Shown: positions 8,450-59,305 of the stretch, in pieces
How the letters are laid out: every line of letters begins with the position of its first letter
Position numbering within the stretch: the first letter of the stretch is position 1
Assembly: GCF_001194135.2 (NCBI RefSeq)
Contig: NC_068996.1
Coordinates: 22,510,850 to 22,574,849, forward strand
DNA length: 64,000 nt
Source: Octopus bimaculoides
Taxonomy: Eukaryota
Reading direction: 5' to 3'
Notes under the pieces: model-generated
Databases searched by the model: none
Seen by the model: only the letters and a program-made list of their open reading frames with translations
Told to the model about the DNA's origin: nothing
Translations under genes and position numbers: made by a program

Positions 8450-9408
8450 ATATAGAATTTAGCCAGAAGATATGTGAAGTGATTTAGTCAGATTTAAGTA
8501 TGTTGGCCCTTGCAGATGAGTTAACACAGAGTGGTAGAATCCTGTTGAAACAATCAGCATAAAATTATGATGGTGATAGTGCTTCCTCTTCTATAAATTT
8601 GTTTTTATATTTGTTCAAAACAAATCATTTATGACAGTGTTTCAGAAAATTTTTTTGTCTGACCTCAAACAAGGAGTTTTAAAAGAAAAAAATATAGTCT
8701 ATTTGTTTGAATATTCATGTTTTGACTTCTGTCTTAGTGTATATGTAAGCAGTCCTGCTGTACAGATATTGCATGTGTACAAAATAGGGATTAAAAAAAA
8801 AAAAATAATTAGAACATAATTAGAATTTTCAATTATCTATCTCTGGCCCACATAACTTTGGAATAGGCGGTGGTAGTAGGGTGCTAAATTTTTGTTGCAT
8901 TACTATCACAAGATAAGATCTTAATTTTATTTTGTATATACCTGTAACCTTGTCCTAAAGAAGAAATAGTACATAAATAATATAGTCAAATAGTTTTAAG
9001 TACAATGACCTTACTCTGTAAGTAAAGACAAATGTAATTAGAAGCTTGTACTGAATTAATGTAAATGTACTTAAAGAGGTGATTAACAATAGTTGTCGAT
9101 AATGCTAACTATAGTTATAGTAAGATTGCAATGAAAGTTGCATGTCAATAGTTCAGAAGGTACCAATTGGTTGGGAAGAGTTTTTTTTTTTGTATATTTC
9201 TATGAAAAGATAATATTACTCGCATTGGCTATTCTTTTTCTATTTTTAGTTGCATGTAATTAATTTATAGTTTTTGAGTTTGTTATAAATTCTTATGACT
9301 TAAAATGAATGTAATTATATCCATACTTGAATTTTAAAAGAAAAATGGTTTTTTAATGGTACTGATTTTCCTAATGCATCCTTTTATAATGGAGATGTGT
9401 GTAATTTA

Positions 9409-9469
9409 ATTAATAATACTAGCTGAATATTTCTATTCAGTTAGTATTATTAATAATACTAACTGAATA
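9409..9469 (+). repeat. Direct-inverted-direct 19-bp triplet including a perfect 36-bp palindrome and the probable branch point
   Basis: TAATAATACTAGCTGAATA (9411-9429), its reverse complement (9434-9452) and TAATAATACTAACTGAATA (9451-9469); 9434-9469 is a perfect palindrome; TACTAAC at 9457-9463. Confidence 0.9.
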
Positions 9470-9490
9470 TTTTTTACTTTTCCTTGACAG

Positions 9491-9648
9491 CTCATGAAGA
9501 TGAGTTTCGGGATGATGACTTCAGAGCTCCACTGTACAAAAATGTCGAAATTAAAGGTATTACTATGCGAATGAAATGGTGTACCACATGTCAGTTTTAC
9601 AGGCCACCCAGGTGCTCTCATTGTAGTGTTTGTAATAATTGTATAGAG
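9491..9648 (+). CDS. ZDHHC8: Internal coding exon of a ZDHHC5/8-type palmitoyltransferase; N-terminal half of the DHHC cysteine-rich domain
   Basis: Acceptor ttccttgacAG|, donor GAG|gtaagt. Encodes (A)[52 protein letters not shown], matching the ZDHHC5/8 signature [32 protein letters not shown]. Starts phase 1, ends phase 0. Confidence 0.97.
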
Positions 9649-12159
9649 GTAAGTGCCTTGTATTAAAATTAGTAAATATCAAGCTTCTTTTTTAATAAAT
9701 TTTTACAATTTAAAATCTAACAAAAACAGTAATCAGCTTTCTTCCATATTATAAACTAGTTGCTTTGCAATACTAATTACTTTATATTAAGAACTATTTC
9801 CTAATTAGAATATCTTAGCTGACCATCAAAAGGAATAAATTAAATTAATGACAGATGATGAAAGTGGTAGTTGTATTATGGCTACAGTTTATTTGATGTG
9901 TTTATAGGATATAGACATGGGAATTCTTTAGAACTTTCAGGTTTGTAGGTTTTGTCCATCAAGAATTCTGACCTGTTTTTTAGTAAACCTGCATGTTCCT
10001 ATGAGAATATAATATATTCAGAGATATAGGCTGCTTTCTTTCAACCTAAAAGTTCATTCAAAATGATGTGACCTGACGTAGCTTGTCAAAACACTCAGCT
10101 TCAATCACCTGCATCTTGTTAGTCATAACAGGATTATCAATTGTAAAACATTGACTTCATGTTTTGTTTCAGCTAAGGATTCTCACATGAACTAAAAGGC
10201 ATTCAATTGAACTGACTTTGTGAAGTTACAGGGTTTAAACTAAATTCATTTTTTCATTGTGCAATAGATATGACCCTGTCTTTGTTTCTTGATGGTAAAT
10301 GAAGATTAATATTTTTATATTTCTCTTCTCTGATGGTAATCAATTACATAACTATTTTCTTAATATACGATTGAGAAAATTGATATGTACAGTAGCTTAA
10401 ATATTAAATAAACAATAATTCTGTAGTTTTGGACTAACCATAGTTCTTCCCAGTTATTATTATTAAACTATGATTATTCAAAGAATATATCTTGATGTAC
10501 TGAATGCATTCAAAAGAATATTAACTTAAAGAGCTTGCCTTATTTTCTGTGCATACCCATCATTCAATGCCAATACTTACAATCGAGACATAAATGTATA
10601 AGCTCTTTACATATTTAAATAAAAATATATTTTAAGGCTTGATATTTAATTCACATTTCATGATTTGTATAAATTGTGTAACCAATCCTATACACACACA
10701 CGCACATATTAGAGAGAGGGAGAAAGATGGATATATGCTTTTTTTTTTTGCCCTTTTGCTTTCTACCCATTTTCATTGAAATTTTCTTATGTATATTCTG
10801 TAAACGCTTGCATGTACGTACTTCCATGAGATTGTGCTGAGAAAGGATTGTAATCAACTCCATGGTTGATTTCAATAAGTAGGGAGGATACCTGGTTGTA
10901 AAACAATTCCTTTTACAAAATGCAAACACTTTTATTTGTAAAAACTATTCCATGCAAACCAGCTTGTTAAATGGAGTGGGGGAACCAATAATGAGATTGT
11001 GGATCATTCTAATATGAAAAACTGATGCTATGTGAATTGAAGCAAAGTCATAATATAATGCTTTTAGTGAAATTTTAATCTATAAAGTAAATCTTTTGTG
11101 TCTGGCACGTTAACCCATTGTTAAATATCTACATACATAATAAAAATGCTATAGTATGTCTACAAGATAAATATAGTCTCACTCTAAGCAGTTTGTTGCC
11201 ATTATACCTAACAAATATAGGGTATATAATTTGAGTGAGAAAGAGAAAGAGGCTAGGTTAATTGTTGCTCAAGTTTAATTCACTGTAAATAACAAAACTA
11301 TATGTTGCCTGGTAACAGCAAATCTTTGTTGGTATGGTTCTCTTATATTCCATTTTCAACTGGAAATATTTCTATTGCAATAGAAGAAAGAAATTTATTT
11401 TGAGATTAACTCTGACAGAAACATGAGTAAAAGAATAGATATAAAGGAAACTACATCCTGTGTATTGAAGACTAATGTCTTTATACTTTGTTAAAGATAT
11501 GTATATGAGTGATATAAGCTACCCTAGATATATCATGATTTTACTAATTAAGTGTATGTGAAATGAATTATGTGTGGAAAATATTTCTAAATAATCTTAT
11601 TATTACTATACATATGTCAGATATATAATTACAGTAACATATTGTGATATACCTACACAATTTCTTATAGTGCACTGGTCAGTAAATGTTTTCTGTTTTT
11701 AATGAATGATTTAATGACCTATTGTTGAGAAAGGCTATTGTGAAGGCTACTTGTAGCCTTCACAATTCCAGCCACTCCTCATTCTGTCTTTGGCTTTCTC
11801 TCTAGATGTCACTAGTTATTTTCAAGACATGCAATGTAAGAAGAATCAAAGTAAGCTATTATAATGCATTTCAAGCAAAGCATTAATTGAATTAGCTTTA
11901 CAATTGTTGGCTGTAGCAGGATTTCATTTCCCTCAAATATGTTGAAAAGCACAATGTAGTCTTTAGTCATTTTCTTTCATACACCCATACACTTCTAGTA
12001 TTTTGTAGAGATTTCTTACTTACATCATACATAAGCATTTTACAGCTTCTTATATATCATTATTCCAAATATGGAGAATGTTCATATTCTGAATTTTTCA
12101 GTCAAATATCATAGATTCAGACACTCAGATATTTTGTCTCTTATATACATCAGTGTGCA

Positions 12160-12599: not shown

Positions 12600-13460
12600 C
12601 AGGGTTTCTGGGCTAAAATTGGCAATTTGCATAAAAGGAAAACAAAATGTAATATCCCATCTGAAAATTAAAATATTTTTTAAAAGTTGTAAAGCTATCA
12701 ACTGGGAGATAACTGTTTACTAGAATTAATTATCCCAGTTTACTAAAATTAATTATCCCCAGCTTCCACCATGGTCTCAAAATAGCTCTGGAACCTGGTG
12801 CATGCATTCTTCACTGTGTGCCTGGGAAGATCTTCAAACACTTCCTTGATCTTGGCTACCAGCTCAGCTTTGGCATTACAGGCAGGGCAGTTCATGTCTT
12901 TCTCAACCACACCACGCACAGTAATCTATGGGATTACAATCAGGGAAATTGGAAGGCTAGAAATTGGGGCTGGTGAAGTCATAGAAATTCAATGGCAACA
13001 ACTTCTGACTCTTTCCAGAGGTATGGCAAAGAGCTGAATCCTGCTATCACATATATGGCCTTCCAGCAGCAACCCTCTCTAGCCAGAGACTGAGCACAGT
13101 CTCCAGCAACTTTACATAGCTATCTGAATTGAGCCTAAAGCCCTCTTCAAATATATGGGGATGAATTTCAGCATGCAGATGCAGTCAGAATGCCTGCCTT
13201 ATCCATTCCTGCTGGCCATGGCTTCTTAGTCTCCATTGCAGTTGTCCATGTTATGTCTTATATACTTCACAAAGCATTGAGCCATAGTCATGATGTTGGC
13301 ATTTTAATACCCAGTACAAATCATCATGATATAGGTAACTCTTTTCCAATATTGGGTTGTTCCCAATATTCCAGTCATCCATGTCAGTTAACATTTTCTC
13401 AACTACAACTTGAATTTTCATGCATTCCAACACCATTGACTGCTCACTAGTAGTTCTTGA
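12600..13460 (-). mobile_element. Degenerate Tc1/mariner transposase remnant, DD37D (maT/mori-like)
   Basis: Minus strand reads, with stops and frameshifts, RPYM*QQDSALCHTSGKSQK..NF..PSNFPDCNPIDY..VEKDMNCPACNAKAELVAKIKEVF; TA-CAGGGT end at 12598. Confidence 0.7.
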
Positions 13461-15654: not shown

Positions 15655-15890
15655 TGAAGGTGCATGGCTCAATGGTTAGAGCGTCGAGCTTACGATCATC
15701 AGGTTGTGAGTTTGAATCCTGGACTGGGTTGCGTGTTGTGTTCTTGAGCAAGACACTTTATTTCACGTTACTCCAGTTCACTCAGCTGTAAAAGTGAGTT
15801 GCAACGTCACAGGTGCCAAGCTGTATCAGACCCTTTGCCTTTCCCTTGGATAACACTGGTGGCATGGAGAGGGGAGGCCGGTATGTATGG
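15655..15890 (+). mobile_element. tRNA-derived SINE, family B
   Basis: Head ggtgcatggctcaatggttagagcgtcg..gagtttgaatcctgg (A/B-box-like), then gtgttgtgttcttgagcaagacacttt..ccagttcactcagctgtaaa central domain. Confidence 0.75.
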
Positions 15891-15905
15891 GTGACTATAT
15901 ATATA

Positions 15906-15938
<33 letters not shown>

Positions 15939-17560
15939 ATGTGTATGTATATGTATGTATGCATGTATATGTATATTTGTATGTATGTATGTATATGTAT
16001 GTATGTATATATGTATGTATGTATATGTATGTATGTATGTTTGTATGTATGTATGTATGTATGTTTGTATGTATGTATGTATGTTTGTATGTATATATGT
16101 ATGTTTGTATGTATATATATATGTTTGTATGTATATATATATATGTATGTATNNNNNNNNNNNNNNNNNNNNNNNNNNNNNNNNNNNNNNNNNNNNNNNN
16201 NNNNNNNNNNNNNNNNNNNNNNNNNNNNNNNNNNNNNNNNNNNNNNNNNNNNNNNNNNNNNNNNNNNNNNNNNNNNNNNNNNNNNNNNNNNNNNNNNNNN
16301 NNNNNNNNNNNNNNNNNNNNNNNNNNNNNNNNNNNNNNNNNNNNNNNNNNNNNNNNNNNNNNNNNNNNNNNNNNNNNNNNNNNNNNNNNNNNNNNNNNNN
16401 NNNNNNNNNNNNNNNNNNNNNNNNNNNNNNNNNNNNNNNNNNNNNNNNNNNNNNNNNNNNNNNNNNNNNNNNNNNNNNNNNNNNNNNNNNNNNNNNNNNN
16501 NNNNNNNNNNNNNNNNNNNNNNNNNNNNNNNNNNNNNNNNNNNNNNNNNNNNNNNNNNNNNNNNNNNNNNNNNNNNNNNNNNNNNNNNNNNNNNNNNNNN
16601 NNNNNNNNNNNNNNNNNNNNNNNNNNNNNNNNNNNNNNNNNNNNNNNNNNNNNNNNNNNNNNNNNNNNNNNNNNNNNNNNNNNNNNNNNNNNNNNNNNNN
16701 NNNNNNNNNNNNNNNNNNNNNNNNNNNNNNNNNNNNNNNNNNNNNNNNNNNNNNNNNNNNNNNNNNNNNNNNNNNNNNNNNNNNNNNNNNNNNNNNNNNN
16801 NNNNNNNNNNNNNNNNNNNNNNNNNNNNNNNNNNNNNNNNNNNNNNNNNNNNNNNNNNNNNNNNNNNNNNNNNNNNNNNNNNNNNNNNNNNNNNNNNNNN
16901 NNNNNNNNNNNNNNNNNNNNNNNNNNNNNNNNNNNNNNNNNNNNNNNNNNNNNNNNNNNNNNNNNNNNNNNNNNNNNNNNNNNNNNNNNNNNNNNNNNNN
17001 NNNNNNNNNNNNNNNNNNNNNNNNNNNNNNNNNNNNNNNNNNNNNNNCATGCGTGCACGTGTATTTATACATGCGTGCACGTGTATTTATACATGCGTGC
17101 ACGTGTATTTATACATGCGTGCACGTGTATTTATACATGCGTGCACGTGTATTTATACATGCGTGCACGTGTATTTATACATCCGTGCACGTGTATTTAT
17201 ACATCCGTGCACGTGTATTTATACATATGTGTGTATGTGTATTTATACATATGTGTATTTATGCATATGTGTGTATGTGTATTTATGCATATGTGTGTAT
17301 GTGTATTTATGCATATGTGTGTATGTGTATTTATGCATATGTGTGTNNNNNNNNNNTATGCATATGTGTGTATGTGTATTTATGCATATGTGTGTATGTG
17401 TATTTATGCATATGTGTGTATGTGTATTTATGCATATGTGTGTATGTGTATTTATGCATATGTGTGTATGTGTATTTATACATCTGTGTGTATGTGTATT
17501 TATGCATATGTGTGTATGTGTATTTATACATATCTGTGTATGTTTATCCATACATATGTG
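15891..17560. repeat. Compound micro/minisatellite spanning a gap: (TATG)n, 22-bp unit x8, 24-bp unit x about 10
   Basis: Units CATGCGTGCACGTGTATTTATA (17048-17223) and ATGCATATGTGTGTATGTGTATTT; source of the spurious long ORFs in the track. Confidence 0.95.
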
Positions 17561-17566
17561 TGCACA

Positions 17567-18403
17567 TATGATGTTTGATCAATAAGTATCCGGCCTGTTG
17601 CCATAGTAATGAAGCTAAAGTACAAACAGTGAAGCTGCTTGGCAAAGATTGAACATGCATACTGCTGTGTATGCGCACTAAGTTTTAACATTCTAGTTCA
17701 CTTCTACTGTTTATAGCAGTACTTGGAAGGAAGATGTGTAATGTGTGATTGTGACATCGACTGTGTCAGAGAAGGTTGTTTTGGCGATACCTGCTCAGAA
17801 GCCAACGCAAAGTTGCAGAAAGTGTATTGAGAGGAGTATATGGGCTGCACACAATTGTACGAGTGGTTCAGCCGTTTCCATGGTGGCTGAAAAATCTCAG
17901 TATTGGAAGACGTGCAACCAGCAGAATTGAGAAAAGCATTAATGTGCATGTAGCTGTAAGGGGAAACCCTTGAATCACCATCTGTGAATTATTAGAGGGT
18001 ATGCAGATCAGTTACGGTTCAGTTCAGTCTATTATCACTGAAGATTTGGGTATGAGACAGTTGTCTGCCAAGTTTGTGCCAAAACTGCTTTCAGCTGGCC
18101 AAAAAGACACTCATGGTTTACTTGCACAAGATCTCCTTAATTGTGCTGAGAATGACGAAAACTTTTTGAAAACTTTGCATAGGCCTCTGAGTATGCATCA
18201 CCAAGCTTTAGACAAATTTGATGCAGATTCTCTGCTCAACTTCCTCTGTCATTGTAAGCAGCAGAAGTGAGCTAGAATGCTAAAATGTAGTGCGCATGCA
18301 CAGCAGAGTTCAAGGTCAATATGTACCAGGCTGCTTCGCTCTGTGTGCTTTAGCTTTGTTACTATGGCAACAGTCCGGAAGCGTATTGATCAGACCACGT
18401 CTA
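17567..18403 (+). mobile_element. Internally deleted mariner element with about 75-bp TIRs
   Basis: Left TGATGTTTGATCAATAAGTATCCGGCCTGTTGCCATAGTAATGAAGCTAAAG; right end is its reverse complement; interior encodes ISYGSVQSIITEDLGMRQLSAKFVPKLLS (mariner HTH / WVPxxL-equivalent) and YEWFSRF. Confidence 0.88.
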
Positions 18404-18875: not shown

Positions 18876-19013
18876 CCAGTCCTCAGTCAAATCGTCCAAC
18901 CCATGCCAGCATGGAAAACAGACGTTAAACGATGATGATTATAATGATCATCATCATCGTTTAACGTCCGCTTTCCATGCTAGCATGGGTTGGACGATTT
19001 GACTGAAGACTGG
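18876..19013. repeat. 64-bp inverted repeat formed by two tail-to-tail RTE 3' ends
   Basis: Left arm 18876-18939, loop 18940-18949, right arm 18950-19013; 60 of 64 positions complementary. Confidence 0.92.
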
Positions 19014-21879: not shown

Positions 21880-24045
21880 CAAATATCTTGAGTGTATTCC
21901 TGGTAGGTGACATCAACTTCCCCAACATCAGGTGGCCTGAGGGCAACATAAACTCAGGAATGACACACAACGAAATAAGCAGAATCTTTACTTGATCTTA
22001 CGAAAATACTATTCATGGAGCAGATCATACTCTCTCCAACTAGGCATAAAAATATCCTACACTTCTGTTTTACAAACAATGTGGAAATTATCCATGTTGT
22101 GAATATATCACTGACAATATTCTCAGACCATAACATGATGGAACTGACAATGTATGGCCTGGAATTAACTAAAGATAAACTCCGCACAGGTGACGCTCAA
22201 ACACTATCCAGCCTAAATTTCTGTGAGGCTGACTGGAAAAACTGATACTCCAGCAGGGCTGGCCTCTCTTTGCAAGACATAGATACAAAACTCAACAAAT
22301 TCATGTCAATAATGCGAACCATATGCATTCAATATGTCCCAAAGAAGAGAGCCATTACACACAAAACATCATTCCCTGAGACAGAAGAATACTTATGAAG
22401 TTGAGAATAAAAATCTCGTTGAAATAAACACCTCAATGAGTGTGAAATCCCACTTGAAAGAGGAACTCTTTGAGATTGGAAATAAATTCACTCTCCCATG
22501 AAAAAGAAAGGGAAGAAAGAGAAACCTGGGCAGTTGAAAATATAAAACAAACTCCTAAAGCTTTCTACATGTTGGCAAAGGAATCTGCCTCAGTATGCTC
22601 TAAGATAGGGCCACCATTTGGTAAAAACGGCTTACTAACTGCAGACCCAGGGAATATAAGTGAAGCACTAAAACAATTCCAAAGTGTTTTCACTTCTCCA
22701 CTGGAAAATATGCAAATAAACAAGGATTTCTTCAATGTAATGAATCTATTTGAAAAAGAGGCAACCATCGATTACATCAACATAACAGAAGAGGATGTAT
22801 TATTGGCTATTGATGAGATGAGATCAAACTCAGCAACAGGCTGTTCTCTTAAAGACATGTATGTAAAAAGGCTTTTGCAAAACCACTGCAGATACTTTTT
22901 CAGAGTTTCCTTGCATGTGGTAAACTTCCCAACATGCTAAAAGAGGGTATAATATGCACTGTCCTTAAAGGCGAGAGTAGAGCAGATGCTAAAAACTACA
23001 GGCCCATCTCTCTGACCTCACATGTTAGCAAGATAATGGAATGCATTGTCAGAAAAAGGCTGATCATGTTCCTAGAAGAAAACAACCTTCTCACAAACAC
23101 GCAACATGGCTTCCGTCCAGGGAGGATACTGAAACAACAGCTAAACCAGTCAGATGTAGACGTGATATATCTTGACCTTGCCAAGGGCTTTGACAGAGTT
23201 GATCATGGAATGATATGTCACAAGCTACGAAACTGGGAGAGTGGCTGCATAACTTCCTAAAGGGCAGGAATCAGACAGTTGTAGGCAATGGTGCTCACTC
23301 TGAAGAGACACCAATTCTCAGAGTCCCACAGGGAACTGTACTGGTGCCACTACTATTTCTGGTGGCCTCTCAGACATGCCTTCCATATACAGTCAGCCAA
23401 TCTGACCAGCTATGCTGACAACACAAAAGTATTGCAGACAGTTAGGAACTCAGAGGACATCATAAAATTGCAGAAAGACCTGACTGATATATACAAATGG
23501 ACTAACAAAAATAACATGCAGTTCAATGTTATGAAATTTCAGGCACTTCACTATTGGCCCAACACCAGGCTAAAATCAGAATACACTGGTCCAGAAGGTA
23601 ATACAATCCCAGAGTCAGAGTTGGTGCATGACCTGGGGGTTAATATGAACAATGATGCAACATTCCATGTGCATATTACCAAGATGGCAACACTGTGCAG
23701 GTGAGTGGCTGGATGGATTCTGAGGGCATATAGAACCAGCAAAAGGGAGCCCCTGCTACACCTATGGGGGATTATCGTTCTCAGCCACTTAGACTGGGGA
23801 ATTCTAAGTAATCCAGCACCACACAAAGAAGATTGACTCGATGCAAAAGATGGGCTACTGGGAGGGACTAAAGGAGTTTAGCCTCTATTCCCTGAAGAAA
23901 AACAAGAGAGATATGCAGTGATATATATTTGGAAGATCTTGGAGGATTTAGCACCTAATTTTGGATTTGACTGCTATACCAATCCTCGAGCTGGACAGCA
24001 CTTTATCATACCAAACATCCCATCTTCCCAATTTAAAATAAGGAC
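21880..24045 (+). pseudogene. CR1-group non-LTR retrotransposon ORF2 (APE plus reverse transcriptase), frameshifted
   Basis: GDINFPNIRW, LHFCFTN and SDHN (endonuclease end); NYRPISLTSHVSKIMECIV, QHGFRPGR, DVIYLDLAKGFDRVDHG, VPQGTVLVPLLF, YADNTKV, LQKDL..IYKW..KNNMQFN (RT). Confidence 0.92.
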
Positions 24046-24214
24046 ACAGTACATATATCAATGGGTATATTTGTATAGGCAGATATATATATGTGTGTAT
24101 AAATATATGAATGTATATATATATATGAATGTATATATATATGAATATGTATATATGAATGTATATATGAATGTATATATATATGTATATATGAATGTAT
24201 GTATATATGAATGT

Positions 24215-24245
<31 letters not shown>

Positions 24246-24381
24246 AACGTGTGTGTGTGTGTGTATATATGTGTGCGTATCTGTACATGTATGTGTATAT
24301 GTATATGTCTATATATATGTGTATGCGTCTGATCTATGCCAGCATGGAAAGTGGACTTAAAACGATGATGATATATGTATA

Positions 24382-24424
<43 letters not shown>

Positions 24425-24610
24425 GCGTGTGTGTATATGTATGTATGTGTGTATATGTATGTTTGTATATATATATGAGGAGAATTCACAAAAAAACAAC
24501 AGATGAAGACAGGTGGTGTAGAAAACAAATAGATGCATTAGTTTAACGCTTGGGAAGTGAAAAAGTCTTTAACGTTTCAAGCTTACGCTCTTCCACAGAA
24601 AGGAACACGT

Positions 24611-24644
<34 letters not shown>

Positions 24645-24670
24645 GCATATATATATATANNNNNNNNNNT

Positions 24671-24704
<34 letters not shown>

Positions 24705-24706
24705 GC

Positions 24707-24744
<38 letters not shown>

Positions 24745-24860
24745 ATATATATGTATGTGTGTATGTATGTATGTATATGTATGTGTGTATATATATATAT
24801 GTATGTATAATTATGTATGTATGTGTATATATATGTGTATGAATGTATATATATGTATAT
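24046..24860. repeat. (TA)n/(TATG)n/(TG)n compound microsatellite with a short RTE tail and a 10-N gap
   Basis: Direct inspection; tgccagcatggaaagtggacttaaaacgatgatg near 24337. Confidence 0.9.
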
Positions 24861-25590
24861 ATGAGGTCATCCCATAAGTTCTGTCCGATTTTAACTTTTT
24901 TAAAATTGAATGAAATTTAATAGTATTTTAGAATGTCTAATGGGATTAAGGATTATTTTTATGCATTTGTGTACATTTAAACTAATTAAATATTATTTTA
25001 CAGAATAATAGAATTAGAATTTCTTTNNNNNNNNNNGTCCAGTTGAGTTTGATGATAAGCTCCTTGAGGCATTACTTGAAGAAAATCCTGCATTATCAGT
25101 TGAAGAATTGGCAATAAAGCTTAGTCCAAACCATACAACTGTTCATCGTCATCTTCAACAACTTGGAAAGGTTCCTAAACTTGGAAAATGGGTACCACAT
25201 GAATTGTCCGAAAGCAACTCATTTCACCCGTTTTGGATAGACTGGTGATGAAAAATGGATCTTCTATCGAAATGTTAAACGTCGTAAACAATGGCTTGGT
25301 AAAAGGGAAAAAGCTCAACCGCAACTGAGAAGGGAACTTTATGGGAAAAGGTTCTCTCTATCTGGTGGGATTGCAAAGGAGTAATTCACTTTGAATTGTT
25401 ACCACCTAATGCAACAATCAATGCTCAAGTCTACTGTCAGTAATTAGAGCGTTTGAACCAAGCTTTGAAGAAAAAAAACCAGCTTTAGTGAATCGAAAAG
25501 GAGTGATGTTTCATCAGGACAATGCACGACCCCACACTGCAAAGATCACATCACAGAAGATCGAAGAGCTTTGTTGGAAAAAAATTCCTC
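24860..25590 (+). mobile_element. Mariner (DD34D) transposase remnant
   Basis: TA-TGAGGTCATCCCATAAG TIR; LLEENPALSVEELA..TVHRHLQQLGKVPKLGKWVPHEL, TGDEKWIFY, VIHFELLPPNATINAQVYC, FHQDNARPHTA. Confidence 0.92.
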
Positions 25591-40948: not shown

Positions 40949-41096
40949 ACTAATTTACAATCTTTTGCAAATTTTGCATATTTTCCCAATTCTTTTGTAA
41001 AAGAGAAAATAATACTTTTCTCCTTTACTCACTCAGAAACTGTAGATAAAATGCTTATAAATGGTTTTAACTGTTTAAATTTTGCTCTTGTTTCAG

Positions 41097-41909
41097 CAAG
41101 CCAGTCTATCTTTAGATGAAGAAACTGAAAGGCAAAGTCAGTCAATGGATTGTGAACCAAGTCCACCAAAGCAATCTGGGTCCTACAGCAATCTCTTTGA
41201 TCCTACTAATCCAACATCAGTAGGGGCAGCTATGCAAGCTAATCAAGGAAATCATATTGGTAGAATATCACCCAGGATACCACCACGTAATTTGTATACA
41301 CAGTCCCCTCAAAGAACACGTTCAGCTGACAAAAAAGCTCCAGTTGCCACACCTGAAGTGGTTTCCCCCATCAGTTCTCCTACAGTAAAATCACAATCTA
41401 GTTCTCCAAGTCCTACTAAATACAACTATGCTAAACCTCCTATAGGTTATCACACACCTCGCTCAAATGGATTCACATCCCTTACACCTGGGCCACAAAT
41501 GACAATGCCATCAACAGGATCTTCACATCCCCCATACATGGGGTCAAGTGTAAATAGAGGTTTTAGTAGGACAGGAAGTCCAGTTATATATACACTGGAT
41601 AAAAGTAAACCTCAGCATTGCCAATATTCTACAGGAGTTGGACAACCACCATATGAACATGGTAACAATGTTAATTATTCTTCTCCATCTCACAGATATA
41701 TGCCTGTGGAATATTCTTCAGTGACATATGACCCTGATAAGGTAAGAGTGCCTCGTCGACCTATGTCATTTGTACGAGCTTTGGAAGTGAGTGAGGCTGT
41801 AGAACAGAAAGAAAAGCAGCATGCTACTCCATCCAAAAGATCAGAGGCTTATCAAGAGGAAGAAAAACCACGTAACATGTATGATTCAACTTATGAAATT
41901 TCAGTTTGA
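41097..41909 (+). CDS. ZDHHC8: Terminal coding exon of ZDHHC5/8: Ser/Pro-rich disordered tail ending in PDZ ligand YEISV*
   Basis: Acceptor ttgctcttgtttcAG|CAA in phase 0; 270 open codons ending NMYDSTYEISV-TGA, the TYEISV end characteristic of ZDHHC5 and ZDHHC8. Confidence 0.96.
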   Translation, partial: QASLSLDEETERQSQSMDCEPSPPKQSGSYSNLFDPTNPTSVGAAMQANQGNHIGRISPRIPPRNLYTQSPQRTRSADKKAPVATPEVVSPISSPTVKSQSSSPSPTKYNYAKPPIGYHTPRSNGFTSLTPGPQMTMPSTGSSHPPYMGSSVNRGFSRTGSPVIYTLDKSKPQHCQYSTGVGQPPYEHGNNVNYSSPSHRYMPVEYSSVTYDPDKVRVPRRPMSFVRALEVSEAVEQKEKQHATPSKRSEAYQEEEKPRNMYDSTYEISV

Positions 41910-52100: not shown

Positions 52101-54116
52101 GTGATGATTTTATATATATATATATATAAATAAAATGTATGTATATATATACACTATGTACACACGCACACAGAAACAAGAAAGAGCAGGTGACAACTAA
52201 CAATAGAAAGAAATTTGTTTCTTACAATTGTATTACATTAAAAAAAATCATATATATATACTTTGTTTTGGTATTTTTGCTTCATCTTACACTGATATAT
52301 TACATAAATATAAATGTAGTATTTATGACAGACAGTTTGCTGCAGCAGTAAAATTGTCTGAGAAGTCTGTCTGCAATCTGGTTTCGACTCTCAATTGGAA
52401 CCACTTCATATCACTCGTCTTTATTATACTTGGTTAAAGGTGTGAAGATCGCAATTTCCTCTTACCTTCACCCAATTCCTAAGCAGTTGTGTGTCTTTAA
52501 AAAACCACTACCAATGAAAATTTTATCTTCAACTTGTATAAGTTCCCCATACTCTAAATTGGCAAGGTATGAGCAATTGGTTTCAAATTTGGGTTTGTTT
52601 GTTTGTTTTCTTAATAATAATTCTAACCTCATTAAAACTTGTTAAAAAGAATTTCATATATANNNNNNNNNNNNNNNNNNNNNNNNNNNNNNNNNNNNNN
52701 NNNNNNNNNNNNNNNNNNNNNNNNNNNNNNNNNNNNNNNNNNNNNNNNNNNNNNNNNNNNNNNNNNNNNNNNNNNNNNNNNNNNNNNNNNNNNNNNNNNN
52801 NNNNNNNNNNNNNNNNNNNNNNNNNNNNNNNNNNNNNNNNNNNNNNNNNNNNNNNNNNNNNNNNNNNNNNNNNNNNNNNNNNNNNNNNNNNNNNNNNNNN
52901 NNNNNNNNNNNNNNNNNNNNNNNNNNNNNNNNNNNNNNNNNNNNNNNNNNNNNNNNNNNNNNNNNNNNNNNNNNNNNNNNNNNNNNNNNNNNNNNNNNNN
53001 NNNNNNNNNNNNNNNNNNNNNNNNNNNNNNNNNNNNNNNNNNNNNNNNNNNNNNNNNNNNNNNNNNNNNNNNNNNNNNNNNNNNNNNNNNNNNNNNNNNN
53101 NNNNNNNNNNNNNNNNNNNNNNNNNNNNNNNNNNNNNNNNNNNNNNNNNNNNNNNNNNNNNNNNNNNNNNNNNNNNNNNNNNNNNNNNNNNNNNNNNNNN
53201 NNNNNNNNNNNNNNNNNNNNNNNNNNNNNNNNNNNNNNNNNNNNNNNNNNNNNNNNNNNNNNNNNNNNNNNNNNNNNNNNNNNNNNNNNNNNNNNNNNNN
53301 NNNNNNNNNNNNNNNNNNNNNNNNNNNNNNNNNNNNNNNNNNNNNNNNNNNNNNNNNNNNNNNNNNNNNNNNNNNNNNNNNNNNNATGGATTGATAATAA
53401 ATCTGATAGCCAATTTTGGATCATAAGAATATATTGAAAATAATTATCAACATATGAAGCTTTGTTTATATTTCTTACTTATTGCAATTATTTTTTCTTT
53501 TTCTTCCACTTGTTTATTTTGAAATACATTTTAAGGCGTGTAAATGTTGCGAAACGCTGGAAAAAGCATAAGAAACAAAAGAGAATAAGAAAAAGAAACA
53601 AGGATGAGAAAAGAATAATATATTTTAGAAGTAATTCCAATGTGGATGTAAGTGTATTTACGAGGACAGTTTTGTTGATGTTTATGTATTTTCTTCGTCT
53701 ACATCATTAATGTTCACTAACAAATTGATATAACTAACACACTTTTCTTAAAAAGTTTGAATCTGTCATTGAATTGGCTGAATACAAACAATACTTATAT
53801 TATTGTAGAAAATTAAGTACATTAAAAATGAATATTTCCTTGTGGAAAGGGAGCTATTTTTTTGTGGAATAGTTAACATTTCCTAAGAGTCACAATAATC
53901 AATAGAATTGACACTCACCTCTAGATTCCATAGCTTTAAGTAGATGAAAGATATTCTGTACAAGAATGCTTATTTGTCTGTATATATGTGTAATATATAT
54001 AAGTGAAGGAAGCAGAATGAATATCAAATGGCAATCTTTGTATCCTAGAACAACAAATACCATGAAATTTGGTCTTGAGTGAACCTCTCATACAGATGCA
54101 AAATACTGAGAACACA

Positions 54117-58730: not shown

Positions 58731-59305
58731 TGAGGGGAAGTCAAAAATTATCTTCACTTTTGCCATAGCATATCTTTATTATTGTCACACTGCCTTCTGC
58801 ACATCCGTGCTTATAGTTGGTAGCATTGTGGTCACGTGATTGAAGTTCGAGCCTGATCACGTCATTTTTCTTTCTGGCTTTACAGTGGCCACTCTCCTAG
58901 CAATGTGCAACAAAGATGAACAAAGAGCAGTGATTAGATTTCTCTGGTGTGTCAGATGCTGAAATTCATTGGAGGCATTTAGCACAATACGGGGACAGTG
59001 CACTATCACGTAGAAGCATGTATGAGTGGATTGAGAAGTTTAAAAGTGGCTGGACAAGCATGATGCACGAAAAGGGAGTGGGATGCCCATCAACCCCACC
59101 ATTAATGAAAAGATTCCGCAAGCTTGAGAGATGGTAGAGCGGCCATGCTTATGCTGTAAAGCCAGAAAGAAAAATGGTACAGTCAGGCTCAAACTTTGAT
59201 CACGTGACCACAATAGTACCAACTCTATGCACGATGCAGAAAGCAGTGTGACAATAATAAAGATATGTTATGGTGAAAGTGCAGGTAATTTTCGACTTCC
59301 CCTCA
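58731..59305 (+). mobile_element. Mariner-derived MITE with about 130-bp TIRs and an N-terminal transposase remnant
   Basis: TA-TGAGGGGAAGTCAAAAATTA.. / ..TAATTTTCGACTTCCCCTCA-TA; interior EQRAVIRFLW..AEIHWRHLAQYGDSALSRRSMYEWIEKFKSG. Confidence 0.9.

What the first reader, a model, noticed from the sequence alone, without database searches (positions are those of the whole stretch)
9409..9490. Two-state hairpin switch over the branch point of the catalytic-domain exon
Seen: three 19-nt units, A (9411-9429), B (9434-9452, reverse complement) and C (9451-9469, direct), sit just upstream of the acceptor at 9490. C contains a perfect TACTAAC (9457-9463; branch A at 9462, 28 nt from the splice junction). 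A carries TACTAGC, with G at the branch position. B can pair with A (about 21 bp, one G-U, UUUC loop), leaving the branch point free, or with C (perfect 36-nt palindrome), burying it. Established: TACTAAC is the optimal U2 branch sequence, and structure over a branch point represses splicing. Inference: a mutually exclusive RNA switch could tune inclusion of the exon that starts the DHHC domain; as a 158-nt exon, its skipping would frameshift. The neutral alternative is a replication template-switch micro-triplication.
Basis: partly seen in the sequence, partly recalled or inferred. Interest (0 to 1): 0.7.

Follow-up and report, generated by a model that had tools for sequence, protein, structure and literature searches.

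The report
Inverted micro-triplication of an intron branch site
Just upstream of a catalytic-domain exon of an octopus palmitoyltransferase gene, the branch-site sequence has been copied forwards, backwards and forwards again; this most likely reflects a tolerated replication accident that folds into one dominant harmless hairpin, not a splicing switch.

Summary
The sequence observation is correct in every coordinate. A (9411-9429), B (9434-9452, inverted) and C (9451-9469) are copies of one 19-nt unit. C carries TACTAAC 28 nt before the acceptor of a 158-nt exon, which opens the DHHC domain of the Octopus bimaculoides ZDHHC5/8 gene.

The "two-state switch" reading is not supported:
- **Energetics.** The A:B hairpin is 5.5 kcal/mol more stable than B:C (-22.7 vs -17.2). 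It takes at least 99.9% of the Boltzmann ensemble at 15-37 C, and it is transcribed first.
- **Conservation.** The orthologous O. vulgaris intron has the units, but three adjacent A:B pairs are broken without compensation. B:C has two mismatches there.
- **Position of the working branch site.** In O. vulgaris a 39-nt extra segment carries a fourth unit, so the proximal branch site lies outside the palindrome.
- **Substitution rate.** A/B differs at 5 of 52 sites, against 4.6% in the surrounding intron. The last 37 intron nucleotides and the exon are identical.

Best reading: a local template-switch (duplication-inversion-duplication) copy of the branch-site segment. It is tolerated because copy A neutralises inverted copy B. 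No outgroup sequence could be retrieved, so the order of events is unresolved.

The parts
9409..9429 (+). Arm A: upstream direct copy of the branch-site unit (5' arm of the dominant hairpin). It contains a degenerate branch motif TACTAGC at 9417-9423, with G at the branch position 9422.
   Evidence: 1 mismatch to the unit; it pairs with 9434-9454 in the minimum-free-energy (MFE) structure. In O. vulgaris the same copy reads TACCAAC.
9430..9433 (+). UUUC loop of the A:B hairpin (TTTT in O. vulgaris).
9434..9454 (+). Arm B: inverted copy of the unit. It is the shared arm that can pair with A (21 bp) or with C (a 36-nt palindrome, 16 bp plus a 4-nt loop when folded). It contains CAG at 9438-9440 and TAG at 9442-9444.
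9451..9469 (+). Unit C: the proximal direct copy. It carries the probable functional branch site TACTAAC at 9457-9463, with the branch A at 9462, 28 nt before the intron end.
   Evidence: The unit is identical in O. vulgaris from 9454 to the exon. CTAAC is also found 24 nt before the next acceptor of the same gene.
9468..9485 (+). Polypyrimidine tract (TATTTTTTACTTTTCCTT).
   Evidence: Read directly from the sequence. Invariant between the two Octopus species.
9489..9490 (+). Acceptor AG.
9491..9648 (+). 158-nt exon of the ZDHHC5/8 orthologue. It encodes (A)[52 protein letters not shown], the N-terminal half of the DHHC cysteine-rich domain.
   Evidence: The exon is 100% identical at DNA level in O. 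vulgaris. The same exon borders appear in genomic exon ORFs of distant animals.
9649..9654 (+). Donor GTAAGT.

Best explanation
This is a local inverted micro-triplication (direct, inverted, direct) of the roughly 24-nt branch-site segment of this intron. It most likely arose by replication template switching (fold-back copying) in an ancestor of O. bimaculoides and O. vulgaris.

The working splicing signals are the proximal copy (TACTAAC 9457-9463), the pyrimidine tract and the AG. The exon is spliced constitutively.

In the pre-mRNA the two upstream copies, A and B, are transcribed first and form a 21-bp hairpin. That hairpin out-competes the B:C palindrome by about 5.5 kcal/mol. As a result the inverted copy B is neutralised and the real branch site sits single-stranded 3 nt beyond the hairpin foot.

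The arrangement is therefore tolerated rather than regulatory. An inverted copy on its own would bury the branch site, and the extra upstream copy acts as its built-in antidote. Since then the A/B copies have drifted at the neutral rate and the region has suffered further indels.

**Shown here:** the anatomy, the energetics, and the lack of conservation of the pairings. **Inferred:** the template-switch origin, constitutive splicing, and actual use of A9462 as the branch point.
For: **Anatomy**
- Three copies of one unit sit at this site only, in 64 kb of the window and 108 kb of the O. vulgaris locus.

**Energetics**
- The MFE structure and centroid are the A:B hairpin.
- As isolated hairpins, A:B is -22.7 and B:C is -17.2 kcal/mol.
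- In 20,000-structure Boltzmann samples, A:B is at least 99.9% and B:C at most 0.07%, at 37, 20 and 15 C and in two sequence contexts.
- B:C appears only when A is forbidden to pair.

**Comparison with O. vulgaris**
- The window is O. bimaculoides by diagnostic residues.
- A, B and C are present in O. vulgaris, so the event is ancestral and real.
- Pairs 9418:9445, 9419:9444 and 9420:9443 are broken there, with zero compensatory double changes. The helix energies drop to -13.3 and -10.3 kcal/mol.
- 5 substitutions fall in 52 nt of A/B, against a local intron rate of 252/5461 = 4.6%.
- There is a 39-nt indel carrying a fourth unit, so the proximal branch site of O. vulgaris lies outside the palindrome.
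- The 37 nt from 9454 to the AG, and the whole exon, are identical.

**Reconstruction of the units**
- Comparing the copies with one another reconstructs every unit to the same sequence, with TACTAAC. That is what one copying event would produce.

**Literature**
- Replication template switching makes reverse-complement repeats and perfect hairpin stems in one step (PMC8794818).

**Exon inclusion**
- All cephalopod ZDHHC5/8 proteins recovered (O. vulgaris, O. sinensis, O. bimaculoides, Argonauta hians, Acanthosepion pharaonis, and Logan transcript assemblies) include the exon.
Against: - Only two species could be compared. No outgroup was retrievable, so neither the pre-duplication state nor the polarity of the 39-nt indel is demonstrated.
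- In the O. bimaculoides lineage, both inferred changes (A to G at 9422, giving a G-U pair, and T to C at 9433, in the loop) are compatible with the A:B helix. B and C are still a perfect palindrome. That could reflect constraint or homogenisation in this lineage.
- Predicted energies ignore proteins, helicases and RNA editing.
- No RNA-seq, lariat or structure-probing data could be examined, so constitutive inclusion and the branch position are inferred.
Confidence: 0.72

Rival explanations
1. Static functional hairpin (decoy masking). The A:B hairpin is maintained by selection because it hides the duplicated upstream branch motif, and the CAG/TAG in arm B that could serve as cryptic acceptors. 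This keeps U2 on the proximal site.
For: - At birth, copy A would have been a perfect TACTAAC, followed 18 nt later by a U-rich stretch and CAG (9438-9440). That is a plausible cryptic 3' splice site whose use would add 50 nt and frameshift (sequence).
- Both lineages independently mutated the heptamer of copy A: TACTAGC in O. bimaculoides and TACCAAC in O. vulgaris.
- The two changes in the O. bimaculoides lineage spare the helix.
Against: - O. vulgaris has let the helix decay by about 9 kcal/mol through three adjacent mismatches.
- Two hits in a 7-nt motif within a roughly 24-nt unit is only weakly non-random (about 0.09).
- Once the decoy is mutated there is nothing left to mask.
Confidence: 0.13
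2. Regulated two-state switch. B toggles between A and C, exposing or burying the branch point, and so tunes inclusion of the 158-nt exon, perhaps through a factor, temperature or editing that destabilises A:B.
For: - The shared-arm geometry exists, and B:C does bury TACTAAC when A is unavailable (-19.7 kcal/mol structure).
- Burying a branch site in structure is known to inhibit splicing and can cause exon skipping (PMC2275289).
Against: - The free-energy gap is 5.5 kcal/mol, or 7 at 18 C, and B:C takes at most 0.07% of the ensemble.
- A:B is transcribed first.
- Neither helix is conserved, and there is no covariation in O. vulgaris.
- The proximal branch site in O. vulgaris is a fourth unit outside the palindrome.
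- Skipping would frameshift the catalytic core, and no skipped product was seen among the recovered cephalopod proteins.
Confidence: 0.06
3. The A:B hairpin is a small-RNA precursor (a miRNA, mirtron-like or short-hairpin Dicer/Ago substrate) or an ADAR editing substrate, born from a template switch.
For: - It is a 21-bp near-perfect stem.
- Template-switch palindromes are a documented source of new miRNA genes (PMC10710096).
- There are weak Rfam miRNA-hairpin matches at 9410-9453 (28.5 bits, E = 0.0015).
Against: - The Rfam score is far below the gathering threshold (28.5 against 86).
- A 46-nt hairpin is shorter than a canonical pre-miRNA.
- The arms are AU-rich and are not conserved in O. 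vulgaris.
- No small-RNA or editing data were available.
Confidence: 0.03
4. Partial assembly artefact. The exact O. bimaculoides configuration (a perfect palindrome, with the 39 nt missing) results from a collapse or fold-back chimera in a gap-rich short-read assembly.
For: - The window has 13 N runs totalling 4,493 bases.
- The site differs from O. vulgaris by exactly one repeat-plus-spacer.
Against: - Units A, B and C occur in the same order at the orthologous site in an independent O. vulgaris assembly.
- The flanks are colinear at about 95% identity.
- A 25-nt repeat is short relative to the reads.
Confidence: 0.03

Closest known systems
Template-switch mutations (TSMs) that create reverse-complement repeats and perfect hairpins (Loytynoja & Goldman model; Monttinen & Loytynoja 2022, PMC8794818). 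At larger scale, DUP-TRP/INV-DUP rearrangements.
   Same: It is a local reverse-complement copy of adjacent sequence flanked by direct copies. The arms were perfect at birth, it is confined to a single locus, and there is a short palindromic microhomology (TA/TTAA) at the B/C junction.
   Different: The copied segment here happens to be the branch site of a coding exon's acceptor. The pre-event ancestor was not observed, so the TSM origin is inferred rather than reconstructed.
Branch-site sequestration switches, for example the engineered theophylline aptamer around the branch-point sequence (PMC2275289), and competing-RNA-pairing systems such as the Drosophila Dscam docking/selector sites (from my own knowledge).
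   Same: One arm (B) can pair with either of two partners, and one of those pairings would bury the branch site.
   Different: There is no balanced energetics and no ligand or factor is known. The pairings are not conserved, show no covariation, and no alternative isoform was observed.
Canonical metazoan 3' splice-site region (branch site yUnAy, optimal UACUAAC; pyrimidine tract; AG).
   Same: TACTAAC lies 28 nt from the AG, is followed by a U-rich tract and has no intervening AG. The region is invariant between two Octopus species.
   Different: Nothing differs, except that the branch-site segment has extra upstream copies.

Membership tests
Mutually exclusive RNA-structure splicing switch | Two alternative pairings that share one arm, one of which occludes a splicing signal | tested here: met
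   B pairs with A (21 bp) or with C (16-18 bp, covering TACTAAC).
Mutually exclusive RNA-structure splicing switch | Both states are populated (comparable free energies), or there is a known effector that shifts the balance | tested here: not met
   -22.7 vs -17.2 kcal/mol. B:C takes at most 0.07% of Boltzmann samples at 15-37 C. No effector could be examined.
Mutually exclusive RNA-structure splicing switch | Pairings conserved across species, with compensatory changes | tested here: not met
   In O. vulgaris three adjacent A:B pairs are broken, B:C has two mismatches, and there are no compensatory double changes. Only one other species was available.
Mutually exclusive RNA-structure splicing switch | An alternative splicing outcome exists (exon skipped, or alternative acceptor used) | not testable with these tools
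   No RNA-seq access. Every recovered cephalopod protein includes the exon, which is weak negative evidence.
Template-switch (fold-back) inverted duplication | A reverse-complement copy of immediately adjacent sequence, near-perfect at origin | tested here: met
   B is the exact reverse complement of C. All units in both species reconstruct to one sequence.
Template-switch (fold-back) inverted duplication | A local single-locus event, not a dispersed repeat or transposon terminal repeat | tested here: met
   The unit is found only at this site in the 64-kb window and only at the orthologous site in 108 kb of O. vulgaris. A genome-wide search was not possible.
Template-switch (fold-back) inverted duplication | An ancestral or outgroup state lacking the inverted copy | not testable with these tools
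   The Argonauta, O. sinensis and O. bimaculoides loci were withheld because the gene range exceeds 100 kb. Sepia was not on record. ORF look-ups and the metagenome scan returned nothing.
Functional 3' splice-site region | A branch-site consensus 18-40 nt upstream of the AG, followed by a pyrimidine tract with no intervening AG, and an exon phase that matches the protein | tested here: met
   The branch A itself has not been mapped.
miRNA / mirtron precursor | A match to a curated family, or a conserved hairpin of at least about 55 nt | tested here: not met
   The best Rfam hit is 28.5 bits against a gathering score of 86. The hairpin is 46 nt and is degraded in O. vulgaris.

The most novel reading that the evidence does not exclude
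In O. bimaculoides specifically, loss of the 39-nt spacer has fused the palindrome to the working branch site. The A:B/B:C competition would then have become a lineage-specific, conditionally tunable brake on production of the ZDHHC5/8 catalytic exon. Possible triggers are a protein binding arm A, cold-dependent kinetics, or ADAR editing of the duplex.
Probability: 0.05. Interest if true: 0.6.

Novelty: new member of a known kind. Interest (0 to 1): 0.2.

Why it matters
The main value is as a clean worked example of two things:
- A replication template switch can duplicate a splicing signal in both orientations.
- Such an event can survive next to an essential exon. The extra upstream copy pairs with the inverted copy and so protects the real branch site.

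It also illustrates that a striking "switch-like" geometry is not evidence of regulation unless the two states are energetically balanced and conserved.

If the rare regulatory reading were true, it would be a natural branch-site occlusion switch in a cephalopod neuronal palmitoyltransferase. Nothing found here points that way.

Tried and rejected
**Attempts to obtain the orthologous intron from more cephalopods**
- O. sinensis, Argonauta hians and O. bimaculoides itself: no DNA was returned, because the gene ranges are 144, 101 and 141 kb.
- Acanthosepion pharaonis: not on record.
- Exact look-ups of the exon ORF, the antisense ORF and a neighbouring ORF: empty.
- The third homologue search, using the exon ORF with its intronic read-through: returned only non-cephalopod genomic exon ORFs.
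- A degenerate-codon scan of JGI metagenome contigs for [13 protein letters not shown]: 0 hits.
- The representative-library search with the antisense ORF: found only antisense ORFs at 34-59% identity, none close enough to be a cephalopod copy.
- P0003 looked like a possible second cephalopod locus, but it is an intronless retrocopy.

**Readings considered and rejected**
- Dispersed repeat or MITE: rejected, because there are no other copies.
- Known RNA family: rejected.
- Chance: rejected.

**Left unresolved**
- The polarity of the 39-nt indel. A deletion between direct copies in O. bimaculoides is the simpler event. The 36-nt tandem relation of C and D in O. vulgaris (83% identity) is not decisive in AT-rich sequence.

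Full report
**1. Observation**

Reading 9200-9800, and checking by script, confirms every coordinate in the finding.
- A, 9411-9429, is TAATAATACTAGCTGAATA.
- B, 9434-9452, is TATTCAGTTAGTATTATTA, the exact reverse complement of C.
- C, 9451-9469, is TAATAATACTAACTGAATA.
- 9434-9469 is a perfect 36-nt palindrome.
- TACTAAC lies at 9457-9463, with A9462 28 nt before the last intron base.
- AG lies at 9489-9490.
- The exon 9491-9648 is 158 nt and is followed by GTAAGT.

The repeat finder reports the same arms, plus a 31-nt direct repeat, 9402-9432 / 9442-9472. The unit occurs three times at up to 3 mismatches, against 0.10 expected, and nowhere else in the 64 kb. The region folds with z = -4.96 against shuffles.

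**2. Context**

The exon encodes [52 protein letters not shown]. The next exon, from 26050, carries DHHCPW.

The gene is the ZDHHC5/8 orthologue. Diagnostic residues in the C-terminal exon, and in an alternative 3' exon, match O. bimaculoides XP_014771794.1 rather than O. sinensis or O. vulgaris. The window is therefore O. bimaculoides.

tblastn places aa 72-125 on 9490-9651. The Pfam DHHC domain starts at aa 96, within this exon. Genomic exon ORFs from distant animals share the same exon borders.

TACTAAC occurs only four times on the plus strand of the window. The next acceptor of the gene has CTAAC at 24 nt. C is therefore a credible branch site.

**3. Energetics**

The minimum-free-energy (MFE) and centroid structures of 9395-9500 are the A:B hairpin: 21 bp, 9409-9429 with 9434-9454, -26.4 kcal/mol for the segment. 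B:C appears only if A is forbidden to pair (-19.7 kcal/mol).

| Hairpin (isolated) | 37 C | 18 C |
|---|---|---|
| A:B | -22.7 | -30.9 |
| B:C | -17.2 | -23.9 |

Values are in kcal/mol.

In 20,000-structure Boltzmann samples, A:B is present in at least 99.9% and B:C in at most 0.07%. This holds at 37, 20 and 15 C and in two sequence contexts. A and B are also transcribed before C.

So this is a system with one dominant state, not a bistable switch. In that state the branch motif starts 3 nt beyond the foot of the hairpin.

**4. Comparison with a relative**

The O. vulgaris locus (L001, OX597829.1) aligns to the window with a local substitution divergence of 252/5461 = 4.6%.

At the orthologous site, O. 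vulgaris has four units:
- A' (TACCAAC), followed by a TTTT loop.
- B' (its reverse complement reads TGTTAAC).
- C' (TACTAAC), followed by a 39-nt segment that is absent from the window.
- D' (TACTAAC), with the same pyrimidine tract and AG.

Pair by pair:
- 9418:9445, 9419:9444 and 9420:9443 are broken in O. vulgaris.
- 9422:9441 is A-U there instead of G-U.
- There is no compensatory double change.

Helix energies fall to -13.3 kcal/mol (A':B') and -10.3 kcal/mol (B':C').

Five substitutions fall in the 52 nt of A/B, where 2.4 are expected at the local rate. In contrast, 9454-9490 and all 158 exon bases are identical. The branch site nearest the acceptor in O. vulgaris is D', which is outside the contiguous palindrome.

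The triplet is therefore ancestral and real. Its pairings are unconstrained, and the juxtaposition of the palindrome with the working branch site is specific to one lineage.

Comparing the copies with one another, all units reconstruct to one sequence containing TACTAAC. On that basis:
- The O. bimaculoides lineage changed A9422 to G and T9433 to C.
- The O. vulgaris lineage changed one base in A, two in B and one in C.

**5. Mechanism**

A direct, inverted, direct arrangement of one short unit, with perfect arms at origin, a palindromic microhomology at the B/C junction and no other copies, is what replication template switching produces (PMC8794818).

An inverted copy alone would bury the branch site, and occluding a branch site does inhibit splicing (PMC2275289). 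Here the upstream direct copy A pairs with B first and more stably, so the arrangement neutralises itself and could persist.

A secondary possibility is that the hairpin, and the independent mutations of A's heptamer in both lineages, reflect selection against a decoy branch site with a nearby CAG. I rate this at about 0.13.

Complex perfect hairpins of this size are not unique. The window has another at 18921-18968, and L001 has one at 12613-12658.

**6. Limits**

No outgroup could be retrieved. The pre-event state and the polarity of the 39-nt indel therefore remain inferred. No transcript-level, lariat or probing data were available. Rfam gives only sub-threshold hairpin matches.

**7. Verdict**

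The feature is real and the annotation is correct, but the switch is not supported. It is a new example of a known mutational class, sitting on a constitutive 3' splice site. Interest is low (0.2). The residual probability of a lineage-specific regulatory role is about 5%.

Noticed in passing
L002:7777-8520 (ENA ERZ21867824, contig ctg59795l): An intronless 247-aa ZDHHC5/8 copy, 76% identical to the octopus protein. Its N-terminus resembles the decapodiform sequence. It looks like a processed retrocopy in another cephalopod genome, with a reverse-transcriptase fragment nearby on the contig.
   Followed up: partly
window 41880-41906 and 53537-53656: The large C-terminal exon ends in YDSTYEISV followed by a stop. 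That ending is also seen in the O. vulgaris, Argonauta and Logan-transcript (P0122) proteins, and it resembles a PDZ-ligand-type tail. The annotated O. bimaculoides and O. sinensis proteins instead splice from ...PRNM to a lysine/arginine-rich exon at about 53.5 kb. This is either an alternative 3' end or an annotation artefact.
   Followed up: partly
window 41096-41110: O. vulgaris 'isoform X2' (P0001) uses an acceptor a few nt downstream of 41096. This shifts the frame to PVYL-stop and would give a 297-aa protein lacking the whole C-terminal tail.
   Followed up: no
window 18921-18968: This is the only other non-simple perfect hairpin in the window: a 19-bp stem (GACGTTAAACGATGATGAT) with a 10-nt loop. 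It lies in a region that looks like a repeated element.
   Followed up: no
window 9397/9398 vs L001 59370-59390: A 21-nt indel (TTTTAGTTTTGTAACATAATG is present only in O. vulgaris) lies just upstream of unit A. The whole 120 nt before the acceptor is therefore indel-prone.
   Followed up: no
window 22853-23257; 58934-59134; 25039-25245: Transposon debris lies inside the introns. There is a reverse-transcriptase fragment (Pfam RVT_1, E = 1.7e-11), a weak match to the HTH_48 domain of Mos1 transposase at 58934-59134 (E = 0.0013, below the Pfam cutoff), and only generic helix-turn-helix matches at 25039-25245.
   Followed up: partly
window 15800-17600 and 24050-24900: Long imperfect TG/TA-rich microsatellite-like tracts, which translate as ...YVCMYV..., flank several N gaps. 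They match a tract of about 12 kb (roughly L001 71.6-83.9 kb) in the O. vulgaris intron.
   Followed up: no
window 9433-9621 (minus strand): A 62-aa ATG-initiated antisense ORF spans the exon and units C and B. Its only database relatives are antisense ORFs of the same exon in other animals (34-59% identity). It is a by-product of the conserved exon, not a gene.
   Followed up: yes
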